Shown: in pieces, positions 33,781 to 43,703 of the stretch
How positions within the stretch are numbered: position 1 is the stretch's first letter
Layout: each line of letters starts with the position of its first letter
Virus record (IMG/VR): IMGVR_UViG_3300048924_000100
Coordinates: 62,001 to 126,000 of that record
Strand: one strand, 5' to 3'
DNA length: 64,000 bases
Position numbers and translations under genes: made by a program
The notes under the pieces: generated by a model
Database searches by the model: none
Told to the model about the DNA's origin: nothing
What the model saw: the letters and a program-made list of their open reading frames with translations, nothing else

Positions 33781-33801
33781 ATTTCAAACCTAAATTATTA
33801 C
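33781..33801 (+). promoter_or_regulatory. Early promoter variant
   Basis: ATTTCAAACCTAAATTATTAC resembles the other six copies. Confidence 0.6.
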
Positions 33802-33865
33802 TTTGTCACCTAGGAAACCATATTCTAGAAAAACGAATTGCGAAACACATGAGGAGTTAAGATCC

Positions 33866-34429
33866 ATGACGACTGTAGCCTGGAACGGCAAGAAACTGGT
33901 AACGGATTCGCAAGTGTCGCTGGGGACGACGGCGAACCCTGGACCGGTCAAAAAGATTTTCGAACCTGAGGAAGGTGAGTATTGGGAGTGCTACGGCACC
34001 AAGGTCGTGGCATTCGGCATCTCGGGGGATGGCAAAGCAATTGGCTTCATGCGCGATCGACTGCGGGAAGGGATTAGCCACCGTACGCGTTTCGATGACA
34101 TCGAGGAAGTATCGTTCGGCGCGCTGGTGATTACCGAGGACGGCAACTGCTACCGCTGGCAGACCAACAAACGGAATGGCCGGCCACAGCACCAAGACCT
34201 GTTGCAACTCATGCCACCTTGCACCGTCGGTTCTGGTCACGCCTATGCCTTGGGGGTCATGTGGATTGGCAAGGACATCGAGACTGCTGTGAAGGCTGCG
34301 ATCAAACTGGACAAGTGGTCAGGTGGAGACTTACAAATCTGGGAACTTCCACCTAAGCCGGACGTCAAGTCTGTTCGTCCCGTCGCACCAACCGCACAAA
34401 CACAAGTGGCCGAAACACCAGCCGCCTAA
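33866..34429 (+). CDS. HslV/proteasome-beta-like Ntn hydrolase, copy 1
   Basis: GAGGAG RBS puts the start at M-TTVAWNG (N-terminal Thr). Also has TDSQ, KKIF, GISG, GSG and D..SGG. Confidence 0.8.
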   Translation: MTTVAWNGKKLVTDSQVSLGTTANPGPVKKIFEPEEGEYWECYGTKVVAFGISGDGKAIGFMRDRLREGISHRTRFDDIEEVSFGALVITEDGNCYRWQTNKRNGRPQHQDLLQLMPPCTVGSGHAYALGVMWIGKDIETAVKAAIKLDKWSGGDLQIWELPPKPDVKSVRPVAPTAQTQVAETPAA

Positions 34430-34443
34430 CCTGGAATAAATCT

Positions 34444-35040
34444 ATGAGCACCATAGCGTTCGACGGAAAACAACTGGTCACGGACTCGTCGGTTTCGATT
34501 GACGAGACGATCAGCCAAACCCAGTTCCGCAAGATCTTTACACCGATTGACGATAACGAGTACTGGGAGATCAACGGTGTACGGGCGTTGGCGTTCGCAG
34601 CTTTCTCGCTACCGATCATCAACCTGGAACTTCGCAAAGCTTTGCAGAAGGGATTGAACGAAGGGGACGACTCAAGCTGCTTCAGCGAAAACTTTGACGC
34701 GATCGTTATCGACGAGACAGGTCTGGCTTACCAGATTGTGGCGGTTTGGGTGGCGTATGGGGACGATCGAAAGCTTCGCATCAGCTTCATCCCGACTACT
34801 GGCATCGTCGCAATTGGGACGGGTGATCAATACGCACTGGCAGTGATGGCTGTGGGTAAATCTGCTCGGTCGGCGATCAAGGCAGCAATTGCCCTGAACG
34901 TTGATTCGGCCGGTAACCTGCAAAGCTTCGAAGTTCCACCGAAACCTGAAACACCATCGAAGCGCCCTCCGGCGGACACCACTACTGAAGCTGGCAAGTG
35001 GATCGACGTCGGTCAGCTGGATCCGGTTGTCAAGTTGTAA
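34444..35040 (+). CDS. HslV/proteasome-beta-like paralog, copy 2 (degenerate)
   Basis: M-STIAFDG, TDSS, RKIF, GTG and N..SAG; clearly homologous to copy 1. Confidence 0.75.
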   Translation: MSTIAFDGKQLVTDSSVSIDETISQTQFRKIFTPIDDNEYWEINGVRALAFAAFSLPIINLELRKALQKGLNEGDDSSCFSENFDAIVIDETGLAYQIVAVWVAYGDDRKLRISFIPTTGIVAIGTGDQYALAVMAVGKSARSAIKAAIALNVDSAGNLQSFEVPPKPETPSKRPPADTTTEAGKWIDVGQLDPVVKL

Positions 35041-35054
35041 ATCTCCTATGCTAT

Positions 35055-35280
35055 GTGAACTCGTGAGTTTGCTCCTGCTTGAAGATAGTTAGCCCTGGCG
35101 TCCCCGTGGGAATAGTTTGGAGTCCCTACCCACATCAGTCAGTCGTCCCCCATTAACGATTGGCTGTCCCGGCAAAGCATCGCTGGGAAAAGCTCCACCT
35201 GCCAACTTAGTCTCATCGTGTCCGGACATCCCACTGTGGTGTCCGGATGCGGTGGGATTATTTCGCATTTTGTTTTTTGT
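35055..35280 (+). ncRNA. Candidate structured non-coding RNA
   Basis: No credible ORF. It starts at a TATG late-promoter-like motif and ends in a ~23-bp G-U-rich hairpin plus T tract. Confidence 0.4.
35208..35280 (+). terminator. Long-stem terminator
   Basis: 35208-35230 pairs with 35238-35260 using several G-U pairs, followed by T tracts. Confidence 0.7.
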
Positions 35281-35424
35281 TACCGGATGGATATATTTTA
35301 TACTTGCACACGTCTTTCGGTTTTTCTCATAGCTGGGTTTTCCGATGATGTGGATTGGAGGTGGGTCCTACTGTCCTTCGGTTAGCAGGTGCTTCTCTCA
35401 CAGGTGCAGCCTTTCTGAGGACAT

Positions 35425-35484
35425 CCCCTGTTGCGGAGTTTCTTGGGCATGCCAAGCACTCTACTTGCGACAGGGGTTATTTTT
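35425..35484 (+). terminator. Intrinsic terminator
   Basis: CCCCTGTTGC ... GCGACAGGGG plus TTATTTTT. Confidence 0.65.
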
Positions 35485-35540
35485 CATCTGTGGATAGATT
35501 CTTGGGCGATGTAGGCAATGGGTTGAAGTCATGTAAAAAG

Positions 35541-35558
35541 ATTTCAAGCCTACATTAC
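35541..35558 (+). promoter_or_regulatory. Early promoter of phuZ
   Basis: ATTTCAAGCCTACATTAC. Confidence 0.7.
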
Positions 35559-35622
35559 TAACACGTTGACCCAATTGGTCTAACGAATTCTTTCAACTGG
35601 TAACTCAAAGAGAACATTTCAC

Positions 35623-38948: not shown

Positions 38949-39333
38949 CATCGTTTCATTTCAGCTGGTGAAGAACGGCATCAACGGTGGAGACCGTATT
39001 GACGTAAAAGTCGACGGTATCCTCCAGTATGCAACGGCTCGAATGATTGACCCACAGTTGGCCATCAAGCACAAAAACCTTTTCCCGTACTTCCAGGATA
39101 AGGTAGGCAACGTCGACGATCCAAACACCTACGGGTATTTGGCGTTGCTGGGTCGTAATGACAAACTGGAGATCATCGGGATTCCATGGATCAATGATTC
39201 GACCTTCCAGCTTATCGATGGGCGTAACGCCAACCTCGTGGTTACGAACTGGCGTGAAGATTTCCGTTCCCCGCTGGCTACATTCATGCAGAGCATCGGG
39301 GCGTCTTACACCCTCACGGTTTTTGACAAGTAA
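38920..39333 (+). CDS. Conserved hypothetical protein (gp49-like)
   Basis: AAGGAG RBS; immediately upstream of the DNA polymerase gene as in phiKZ. Confidence 0.65.
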   Translation: MATLNPSRGDIVSFQLVKNGINGGDRIDVKVDGILQYATARMIDPQLAIKHKNLFPYFQDKVGNVDDPNTYGYLALLGRNDKLEIIGIPWINDSTFQLIDGRNANLVVTNWREDFRSPLATFMQSIGASYTLTVFDK

Positions 39334-39342
39334 GGGTAAACT

Positions 39343-39392
39343 GTCACTACATTCCTCATTCATAGGGGAGTGTAGTGACTATTTTCTTTTTT
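39343..39392 (+). terminator. Intrinsic terminator
   Basis: GTCACTACATTCC / GGAGTGTAGTGAC plus T tract. Confidence 0.75.
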
Positions 39393-39446
39393 GCAATCTG
39401 ATTTTTATTTCTTAATTAATTTGCTTATTCTGAGAGTGTTAACCTG

Positions 39447-43485: not shown

Positions 43486-43685
43486 AGTAGTTATCCGAAA
43501 CAAATGATGGGGATGTAAGAATAAAGTATTACTGCAATCTCCTATCTTATGTGAACAAGTCACATCAGAGGAAGTGTCCTCTACTGGGGACCATTGCGCA
43601 ATTCGAGAATTAGTGATATGATTAGAAGTTGATTACTCTATATCATCCCTGCTGAAAAGTAGGGTGATTTCAGTGGGGTAAGAAA

Positions 43686-43703
43686 ATTTCAAACCCATAT
43701 TAC
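43686..43703 (+). promoter_or_regulatory. Early promoter of chmA
   Basis: ATTTCAAACCCATATTAC. Confidence 0.7.

What the first reader, a model, noticed from the sequence alone, without database searches (positions are those of the whole stretch)
35040..35490. Candidate structured ncRNA locus upstream of phuZ, starting at a 21-nt motif shared with the chmA upstream region
Seen: about 580 bp without a credible gene in an otherwise dense genome. It opens with AATCTCCTATGCTATGTGAAC (35040-35060), which matches AATCTCCTATCTTATGTGAAC (43536-43556) at 19/21 positions. It contains a ~23-bp stem held by about 6 G-U pairs (which works as + strand RNA only), a second terminator-like hairpin, and short long-range complementarities (CCACATCA/TGATGTGG; CACCTGC/GCAGGTG). 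Known: phiKZ late promoters have a TATG core at the start site. Inference: one or two nvRNAP-transcribed small RNAs starting GUGAAC.
Basis: partly seen in the sequence, partly recalled or inferred. Interest (0 to 1): 0.65.

Follow-up and report, generated by a model that had tools for sequence, protein, structure and literature searches.

The report
Two conserved jumbo-phage small RNAs
The 580-base gap in front of the phage tubulin gene phuZ holds two back-to-back genes for folded, non-coding RNAs, one of them pseudoknotted, which are conserved across EL-like nucleus-forming jumbo phages, match no catalogued RNA family and have no known function.

Summary
Window 35041-35622 has no gene. The 21-nt motif recurs at 43536-43556 (19/21, none expected by chance). 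The 23-bp stem with six G-U pairs and the second terminator hairpin are both real.

The gap is more conserved than the end of the neighbouring gene. A homologous locus lies upstream of phuZ in at least eight phage clades, down to 38% PhuZ identity, including Pseudomonas phage EL.

It holds two units, not one.
- **RNA1** (about 35055-35281) starts at a TATnnTATG motif. That 9-mer occurs only five times in the 214-kb genome, always outside genes, and one copy precedes the major head gene. RNA1 has a 5' hairpin, an H-type pseudoknot with clear covariation, and a strong terminator.
- **RNA2** (about 35302-35485) starts at TATnnTATAC and ends at the second terminator.
- phuZ has its own early-type promoter at 35541-35558.

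Nothing in Rfam matches, and there is no coding signal. No RNA data exist, so expression, ends and function are inferred. My best guess is stable late small RNAs acting in trans. The main rival is a cis leader or attenuator for late phuZ expression.

The parts
35040..35060 (+). Its core 35047-35055 (TATGCTATG) is a predicted late-type promoter, with the start predicted at G35055.
   Evidence: 19/21 match to 43536-43556 with none expected. TATnnTATG occurs 5 times in 214 kb, all outside genes, including upstream of the major head protein. The motif sits at the start of the conserved block in all clades. The phiKZ late promoter is T-3ATG+1 (PMC7598289).
35055..35072 (+). RNA1 5'-terminal hairpin (7 bp, CGUG loop).
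   Evidence: Fold. L045 and L046 keep the hairpin with changes on both sides. All five TATnnTATG sites are followed by a hairpin within about 25 nt.
35106..35133 (+). RNA1 hairpin P2 (GUGGG/CCCAC). Its loop, 35111-35128, carries the 5' strand of the pseudoknot (UGGAGU, 35118-35123).
   Evidence: The stem covaries: U-A, U-G and C-G at one pair, G-C to A-U at another. The loop motif (A/U)GGUUAGGAG-like is shared with EL and other clades.
35136..35187 (+). RNA1 hairpins P3 (35136-35166, loop CCCCCAUUA) and P4 (35168-35187). They form the roughly 50-nt insert between P2 and the 3' strand of the pseudoknot.
   Evidence: Compensatory changes in both helices. The insert is 46-53 nt in every clade although its sequence and number of hairpins differ.
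35188..35197 (+). A-run (35188-35191) plus the 3' strand of the pseudoknot (GCUCCA, 35192-35197).
   Evidence: Loop and 3' strand covary across 8 clades. Examples: GGAGU:GCUCC, GGAGU:ACUCC, GGAGGC:GCCUCC, GGAAGU:ACUUCC, GGGAGGUU:AACCUCCC, GGGGAGUU:AACUCCCC. Partner-swap test: cognate -13.7 kcal/mol, 0 of 20000 permutations as good.
35208..35281 (+). Terminator T1. A 23-bp stem (35208-35260, 6 G-U pairs) with a U-rich tail. It is the predicted 3' end of RNA1 and the first terminator after the HslV-like genes.
   Evidence: 13 of 19 pairs change on both sides. The tail is of the same type as a gene-end terminator at 39340-39400.
35294..35303 (+). TATTTTATAC, the predicted promoter of RNA2 (late-type variant, start predicted at A35302).
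   Evidence: This is the block best conserved between distant clades: TAT(n)nTTATAC in 7 clades and TACTATG in L047. TATnnTATA occurs only twice in the genome, and the other copy lies inside a gene.
35302..35390 (+). RNA2 core, a three-way junction: closing helix 35302-35307 with 35385-35390, long hairpin 35309-35352, and hairpin 35353-35383 containing GGAGGUGGG.
   Evidence: Folds. The closing helix keeps pairing through U-G to U-A changes. A hairpin at the same place, with a conserved loop (GCCAUGGUUC), occurs in EL-type clades.
35425..35485 (+). Terminator T2 (stem 35425-35476, then UUAUUUUUC). It is the predicted 3' end of RNA2. Three clade members carry a 25-nt insert in its loop.
   Evidence: -29.7 kcal/mol, z -4.0. 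Compensatory pairs. A terminator sits at the same place in all clades.
35541..35558 (+). phuZ's own early-type promoter (ATTTCAAGCCTACATTAC). 35559-35622 is the phuZ 5'UTR. This part is not an ncRNA.
   Evidence: 16 copies of this motif in the genome, 15 on the + strand, including upstream of chmA. The EL counterpart is annotated as a putative phage promoter.
43543..43675 (+). Related element upstream of chmA. TATCTTATG promoter (43543-43551), 5' hairpin, conserved structured leader ('RNA3') and a weak terminator-like hairpin. The chmA early promoter follows at 43686-43703.
   Evidence: Conserved in 7 relatives, with compensatory changes in the hairpin at 43566-43584.

Best explanation
The gap holds two tandem small-RNA genes on the + strand.

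**RNA1** is about 215-225 nt.
- It is transcribed from a strong late-type promoter, TATnnTATG. The same 9-mer stands in front of the major head gene.
- By analogy with phiKZ, the phage's non-virion RNA polymerase would use this promoter and start at G35055.
- The RNA folds into a 5'-terminal hairpin and a compact H-type pseudoknot: the P2 loop pairs with an A-run/CUCC motif about 50 nt downstream, and P3/P4 lie in between.
- It ends at a 23-bp intrinsic terminator. That terminator also ends the early HslV-like operon.

**RNA2** is about 185 nt. It starts at a variant promoter (TATnnTATAC, A35302), folds into a three-way junction and ends at a second terminator.

phuZ is then transcribed from its own early promoter.

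**Proposed function.** I take both RNAs to be stable, abundant late-phase RNAs that act in trans by binding a protein or another RNA. Their terminators would also shield the phuZ promoter from upstream transcription.

**Shown:** sequence conservation, base-pair covariation, strand specificity, lack of coding signal, motif distribution.

**Inferred:** transcription, the polymerase, the RNA ends, stability, and action in trans.
For: - **Conservation.** The gap is more conserved than the 3' end of the upstream gene in 8 close relatives.
- **Deep homologues.** Homologous loci lie upstream of phuZ in clades with 66%, 48%, 45% (EL), 44%, 40%, 39% and 38% PhuZ identity.
- **Model search.** A covariance model built from the window clade finds EL, L046 and L047 at E of about 1e-5 to 1e-4. 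It finds nothing else in 688 kb of unrelated viral DNA.
- **RNA1 covariation.** 43 of 66 pairs change on both sides, against 14.3 +/- 2.7 in shuffles and 9-13 in slid controls.
- **Pseudoknot.** The partner-swap test gave 0 of 20000 permutations as good.
- **Strand.** The + strand is favoured through G-U pairs.
- **Not coding.** Variable sites fall 38/37/37 by position modulo 3, against 54/49/163 by codon position (1st/2nd/3rd) in phuZ. Indels are mostly 1-2 nt.
- **Promoter motif.** It stands only outside genes and in front of the major head gene. The same motif stands in front of two orthologous genes in EL.
- **Terminators.**. phuZ early promoter family.
- **Precedent.** Short promoter-to-terminator RNAs upstream of genes are documented in 201phi2-1 and phiKZ (PMC11512511).
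Against: - No transcript data exist. No RNA run holds the sequence, and the runs I laid were DNA contigs.
- RNA2 covariation in the close group is weak: 4 pairs against 0.8 in shuffles.
- The RNA2 model does not find the EL-type RNA2s. Their homology rests on position, promoter block and hairpin architecture.
- Only 5 TATnnTATG sites exist, so its class (late or middle) is inferred from one head gene and from phiKZ.
- Nothing shows action in trans. No conserved target or partner was found.
- The same layout (distal late promoter, structured RNA, terminator, early promoter, early gene) recurs at chmA. That fits a cis role equally well.
Confidence: 0.6

Rival explanations
1. The locus is a cis-acting leader or attenuator. 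It would be a long structured 5' leader of a late phuZ mRNA. The pseudoknotted domain and the two terminators would set, through a ligand, a protein or the polymerase itself, how much late transcription reads through into phuZ. This resembles a riboswitch or a put-like antiterminator RNA. The short RNAs would then be by-products.
For: - The order is late promoter, pseudoknot domain, terminator, gene. That is the classic layout of transcriptional riboswitches and of HK022 put sites (my own knowledge).
- chmA, another early gene needed in bulk, has the same distal TATnnTATG promoter, a conserved structured leader and a hairpin before its early promoter.
- phiKZ chmA (PHIKZ054) has an early and a middle start site (PMC8244752).
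- In 201phi2-1, 8 of 11 sRNAs come from premature termination in 5'UTRs.
- In L047 the 3' strand of the pseudoknot overlaps the terminator stem by about 2 nt.
Against: - No terminator/antiterminator alternative pairing is conserved across clades. The spacing from pseudoknot to terminator varies from overlap to 13 nt.
- RNA2 has its own conserved promoter-like block, and phuZ has its own promoter, so RNA1 is two units away from the gene.
- T1 is very strong (23 bp, -36 kcal/mol) and of the same type as gene-end terminators.
- No known riboswitch or leader family matches.
- RNA1 and the chmA leader share no fold.
Confidence: 0.27
2. The locus is one long non-coding RNA of about 430-570 nt. T1 would be an internal structural hairpin, and long-range pairs would join the two halves.
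For: The whole gap folds well as one molecule (z -5.5). In this genome, CCACATCA/TGATGTGG and CACCTGC/GCAGGTG can pair. A joint consensus fold draws some long-range pairs.
Against: - The long-range pairs are not kept in relatives.
- T1 carries a full U-rich tail, like genuine terminators.
- A conserved promoter-like block follows T1 in every clade.
- Each half folds on its own with closed ends.
Confidence: 0.07
3. The gap encodes small proteins (the 71-aa and 68-aa ORFs here; 136-145-aa ORFs in L006 and L007). Some EL-like GenBank records annotate it this way.
For: ORFs exist. Four EL-like records list hypothetical proteins over the locus.
Against: There is no codon periodicity. Indels of 1-2 nt are frequent. 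The ORFs are not conserved between close relatives. Paired columns covary as RNA helices.
Confidence: 0.02
4. The locus acts as DNA. It could be a replication origin primed by promoter transcripts, or a centromere-like site for the PhuZ tubulin, as tubC is for TubZ systems.
For: It lies next to phuZ and a few kb from the DNA polymerase gene. There is a T-rich stretch at 35260-35300 (AT skew -0.45). Promoters in an origin are known from T4 and T7 (my own knowledge).
Against: Compensatory changes and strand-specific G-U pairs point to selection on a + strand RNA. I saw no iterated repeats when reading and aligning the gap, though I ran no repeat search. FishSpeaker has HslV abutting phuZ with no such region.
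Confidence: 0.04

Closest known systems
Short sRNAs of giant phages 201phi2-1 and phiKZ (e.g. sRNA005 upstream of gp277, sRNAgp182), found by ONT-cappable-seq (PMC11512511)
   Same: Chimallivirus RNAs under 250 nt, defined by a start site followed closely by a terminator. They lie in intergenic or 5'UTR positions, are conserved by position across genera including EL, and have unknown function.
   Different: A different locus (tail gene against phuZ). I did not test sequence relation. Here there are two tandem units, a covarying pseudoknot and a much deeper comparative data set, but no transcript evidence.
phiKZ late promoters, T-3ATG+1, used by the non-virion RNA polymerase (PMC7598289)
   Same: TATG core at the predicted start. 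The motif stands in front of the major head gene. The tetramer is depleted genome-wide (712 seen, about 1595 expected).
   Different: Here an extended TATnnTAT(G/A) form marks a small subset of sites. An A at +1 (RNA2) would not work in phiKZ, where all four bases are required in vitro. The polymerase is untested.
Dual early plus middle start sites of phiKZ chmA, PHIKZ054 (PMC8244752)
   Same: A nuclear-shell or cytoskeleton gene with an early promoter and a second, later promoter further upstream. This is seen here for chmA and, formally, for phuZ.
   Different: Here structured RNAs and terminators lie between the two promoters.
Transcriptional riboswitches with H-type pseudoknots (preQ1, SAM-II, fluoride) and HK022 put antiterminator RNAs (my own knowledge)
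   Same: A hairpin loop pairs with a downstream strand preceded by an A-run. The domain lies just after a promoter and just before an intrinsic terminator.
   Different: No Rfam match. No conserved competing antiterminator helix. No ORF in the same unit. A 50-nt insert with one or two hairpins lies inside the pseudoknot.

Membership tests
phiKZ-type late promoter (T-3ATG+1) | TATG tetramer at the transcription start | tested here: met
   TATG at 35052-35055 marks the start of the conserved block. It is kept in all clades upstream of RNA1.
phiKZ-type late promoter (T-3ATG+1) | The same element precedes late (virion) genes of the same genome | tested here: met
   TATTTTATG lies 60 nt upstream of the major head protein gene (phrog_3231, E 8.5e-176). 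All 5 TATnnTATG sites lie outside genes.
phiKZ-type late promoter (T-3ATG+1) | Initiation at the G by the non-virion RNA polymerase, late in infection | not testable with these tools
   No RNA run holds the sequence.
Intrinsic (factor-independent) terminator | G+C-rich stem-loop directly followed by a U-run | tested here: met
   T1 at 35208-35260 plus tail; T2 at 35425-35476 plus UUAUUUUUC. T1 resembles the gene-end terminator at 39340-39400.
Chimallivirus promoter-to-terminator sRNAs (201phi2-1 / phiKZ type) | Start site and terminator less than 250 nt apart, upstream of a gene | tested here: met
   Predicted units are about 220 and 185 nt. The boundaries are predictions only.
Chimallivirus promoter-to-terminator sRNAs (201phi2-1 / phiKZ type) | Enriched short primary transcripts in infected cells | not testable with these tools
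   No RNA data. I found no EL transcriptome in the paper library.
Any Rfam 15 family (riboswitches, ribozymes, tmRNA, RNase P, 6S, known sRNAs) | Match to the family covariance model | tested here: not met
   No hit in the gap at E up to 10 beyond chance-level miRNA matches. No gathering-score hit in the window. No hit in the homologous loci of 7 other clades. ARAGORN found no tRNA or tmRNA.
Transcriptional riboswitch / attenuator | Conserved, mutually exclusive terminator and antiterminator pairings | tested here: inconclusive
   Candidate competitors exist in some clades (window, L044, L047), but none is consistent across clades.
H-type RNA pseudoknot | A hairpin loop pairs with a downstream single strand, with compensatory changes | tested here: met
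   6-8 bp in each of 8 clades, with covarying positions. Partner-swap test gave 0 of 20000.
Protein-coding gene | Conserved open frame and third-position bias of substitutions | tested here: not met
   Variable sites 38/37/37 by position modulo 3, against 54/49/163 by codon position in phuZ. ORFs differ between relatives.

The most novel reading that the evidence does not exclude
RNA1 could be a new sensor or polymerase-modifying RNA of nucleus-forming phages. Its pseudoknot would bind a metabolite, a phage protein or the non-virion polymerase itself. That binding would decide whether late transcription stops at T1/T2 or runs on into the tubulin gene. Together with the chmA leader, this would be a previously unseen RNA-based switch from early to late supply of the nucleus and spindle proteins.
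Probability: 0.12. Interest if true: 0.85.

Novelty: new variant of a known kind. Interest (0 to 1): 0.6.

Why it matters
Non-coding RNAs of nucleus-forming jumbo phages are barely charted. A 2026 review says only that phiKZ expresses some (PMC13282480).

Here is a pair of RNAs with a well-supported fold. They are kept at one genomic position from soil and rhizosphere phages to the cultivable P. aeruginosa phage EL. They are absent from Rfam and are annotated in some EL-like records as hypothetical proteins.

The locus can be tested directly in EL. It also gives a sequence signature, TATnnTAT(G/A) followed by a 5' hairpin, for a strong promoter class outside phiKZ. It may bear on how phuZ and chmA, both early genes, are supplied late in infection.

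Tried and rejected
- **blastn** of the gap against 50,697 phage records found nothing. Relatives were reached through PhuZ instead.
- **Exact 15-mer and 22-mer scans** of IMG/VR returned only the known relatives plus four chance hits.
- **A gapped 16-base pattern** returned 120 or more chance hits. The model found only EL among the 80 listed loci I fetched.
- **MAFFT across distant clades** put the helices out of register. Cross-clade covariation was therefore scored by a partner-swap script.
- **The RNA2 model** does not reach EL-type clades.
- **My swap test for the RNA2 hairpin** is biased, because the arms were taken from each sequence's own fold. I do not count it as evidence.
- **The only other TATnnTATA in the genome** (G000 149876) looked like another RNA locus but lies inside an open frame.
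- **Seed searches** for targets of the CCCCCAUUA loop and the CUCCACC motif gave nothing convincing.
- **The antiterminator search** was inconsistent across clades.
- **Sequencing runs:** all 18 listed are DNA. The 4 I laid (X2-X5) showed relatives in root, soil and freshwater-sediment samples, carrying the same compensatory changes.
- **Model hits** at 39288-39412 and in Vibrio phage phiKT1019 are terminators only.

Full report
**Setting.** The window is bases 62001-126000 of a 214,198-bp IMG/VR virus record. Its PhuZ is 45% identical to those of Pseudomonas phage EL and Erwinia phage RisingSun. It also encodes chimallin. It is therefore a nucleus-forming jumbo phage of the wider EL lineage. 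The best DNA holders are root metagenomes.

**The observation.** The gap 35041-35622 lies between the second of two tandem HslV-family peptidase genes and phuZ.
- The 21-mer at 35040-35060 recurs at 43536-43556 with 2 mismatches. None is expected by chance, and there is no further copy in the genome.
- The + strand of the gap folds far better than shuffles (z -5.5) and better than the - strand (z -2.7).
- The large stem is 23 bp with six G-U pairs. It scores -36.4 kcal/mol on the + strand and -19.7 on the - strand.
- Rfam gives nothing, and ARAGORN gives nothing.

**Conservation.** Seven IMG/VR contigs with PhuZ 79-96% identical carry the same gap. In their alignment the gap is almost invariant from the TATG onward. 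The end of the upstream gene is not.

Searching with a PhuZ alignment reached more distant phages. These have 66% (L030/L034/L042), 48% (L044), 45% (EL), 44% (L045), 40% (L046), 39% (L032) and 38% (L047) PhuZ identity. All have a recognisably homologous region between an HslV-like gene and phuZ.

Ten EL-like isolates are 97-100% identical over it, and four of these records annotate hypothetical proteins there.

The locus is missing elsewhere:
- In Shewanella phage FishSpeaker, HslV abuts phuZ.
- In phiKZ, gp38 abuts gp39.
- The RNA1 model finds no match anywhere in RisingSun, AVP1 or phiKT1019 beyond terminators.

Each RNA is single-copy in its own genome.

**Not coding.** Variable sites in 35055-35490 fall 38/37/37 by position modulo 3. 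In phuZ they fall 54/49/163 by codon position (1st/2nd/3rd). Gap runs are mostly 1-2 nt. ORFs in the gap differ from relative to relative.

**Two units, with promoters.** The conserved block opens with TATGCTATG. TATnnTATG occurs only five times in the genome.

All five copies lie outside real genes. The crude gene table flags the chmA copy as coding only because of an overlapping minus-strand ORF call. The five sites are:
- RNA1.
- The chmA upstream region.
- 60 nt before the major head protein gene.
- Before two further genes.

EL also has five sites, all intergenic. Two stand before the orthologues of those two further genes. The published phiKZ late promoter is T-3ATG+1, read by the non-virion polymerase (PMC7598289). 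Every one of the five sites is followed by a hairpin within about 25 nt.

After the first terminator comes TATTTTATAC. This is the block best conserved between distant clades, and it reads TACTATG in L047. I read it as a second promoter of the same type, with A at +1.

The last 130 nt of the gap contain ATTTCAAGCCTACATTAC. This motif belongs to a 16-copy family, almost all on the + strand, that also precedes chmA. Its EL counterpart is annotated as a putative promoter. It resembles the AT-rich early promoters of these phages. So phuZ has its own early promoter, and this part of the gap is not ncRNA.

**RNA1 structure.** The consensus fold of the ten closest sequences has 66 pairs, 15 of them with changes on both sides.

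On a model-fitted alignment that adds EL, L046 and L047:
- 93.9% of cells pair.
- 43 of 66 pairs change on both sides.
- The controls give 14.3 +/- 2.7 in shuffles and 9-13 when partners are slid. Such an alignment leans towards the model.

The elements are:
- A 5' hairpin.
- P2 (35106-35133).
- P3 and P4 (35136-35187). EL-type clades have a single longer hairpin here, but the insert is always 46-53 nt.
- An A-run and a CU-rich strand (35188-35197).
- Terminator T1.

The P2 loop pairs with the CU-rich strand, and the two sides covary in all eight clades. Both segments were defined independently of the pairing. When they are swapped between clades, the mean duplex energy falls from -13.7 to about -10 kcal/mol, and none of 20000 permutations does as well.

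This is an H-type pseudoknot with the A-run placed where it could dock on P2. An alternative pairing of the same strand with GUGAGUUU near the 5' end is less well supported.

**RNA2 structure.** In the window clade and in L030, a closing helix (ACUUGC/GCAGGU) holds a long hairpin and a second hairpin containing GGAGGUGGG. T2 follows.

Sequence is so conserved that covariation is thin: 4 pairs against 0.8 in shuffles. EL-type clades have a long hairpin at the same place, with a conserved loop, then a small hairpin and a terminator. The RNA2 model does not detect them, however. Homology of RNA2 across the deep split is therefore probable, not shown.

CCACATCA/TGATGTGG and CACCTGC/GCAGGTG are complementary here. 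The relatives change one side only, and GCAGGU is used by the RNA2 closing helix. One long fold is therefore unlikely.

**The chmA motif.** The shared 21-mer reflects the same promoter type plus a 5' hairpin starting UGUGAAC. Downstream of it, the chmA region carries its own conserved structured leader, with compensatory changes and a weak terminator-like hairpin, before the chmA early promoter. It does not resemble RNA1. In phiKZ, chmA also has an early and a later start site (PMC8244752).

**What it does.** Nothing here tests function. The layout matches the promoter-to-terminator sRNAs seen by long-read RNA-seq in 201phi2-1 and phiKZ (PMC11512511).

I favour two stable late RNAs acting in trans (0.6 for the package as stated). 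T1 would double as terminator of the early HslV-like operon, since only 6 nt separate that operon's stop codon from the promoter motif.

The main rival (0.27) is a cis leader that meters late read-through into phuZ. The parallel at chmA supports it. The second promoter, the strength of T1 and the lack of a conserved antiterminator weaken it.

**Limits.** No RNA-seq exists for this phage or for EL. The runs I laid were DNA contigs of relatives, and they show the same compensatory substitutions. E-values from the models are rough.

Noticed in passing
window 9494, 14825, 33781, 35541, 43686, 52794 (and 10 more in G000): A 16-copy promoter-like family, ATTT(C/A)AAnCCTAnATTA(C/T), with 15 copies on the + strand. 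It is probably the early (virion polymerase) promoter set of this phage. The copy at 33781 precedes the HslV-like gene pair.
   Followed up: partly
window 33803-34429 and 34444-35040: Two tandem paralogous HslV-family peptidase genes (phrog_1040) with no HslU partner nearby. HslV-phuZ synteny is kept from EL to FishSpeaker.
   Followed up: partly
window 43551-43675: A third conserved structured RNA or leader between a TATCTTATG promoter and the chmA early promoter. It shows compensatory changes in 7 relatives and has an invariant GGGGACCAUUGCGCAA block.
   Followed up: partly
G000 whole genome: The tetramer TATG is strongly depleted (712 seen, about 1595 expected from base composition). 15% of copies lie in the 6% of the genome outside crude gene calls. 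This fits selection against stray late promoters.
   Followed up: no
window 39340-39400; L067 1530-1600 (Vibrio phage phiKT1019): Terminators in this phage and in a distant Vibrio chimallivirus share a tail of the form U-run, GCA, UUnUG, U-run after the stem. An early-type promoter often follows.
   Followed up: no
L010 2342-2997 (Erwinia phage RisingSun): A 657-nt gene-free stretch upstream of phuZ that is not homologous to this locus. It folds moderately well (z -2.5), ends in a terminator and has no Rfam match. It may be an analogous RNA locus.
   Followed up: partly
EL-like GenBank records PQ516283, PQ287649, PV472050, PQ287644 (hits H43-H46): Hypothetical proteins are annotated across the RNA1/RNA2 locus. 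L006 and L007 have chance ORFs of 136 and 145 aa there. These are probably mis-annotations.
   Followed up: partly
L035 (G000 163039-163107), L036, L037: All TATnnTATG sites are followed within about 25 nt by a small hairpin. This suggests 5'-terminal stem-loops are a regular feature of these transcripts.
   Followed up: partly
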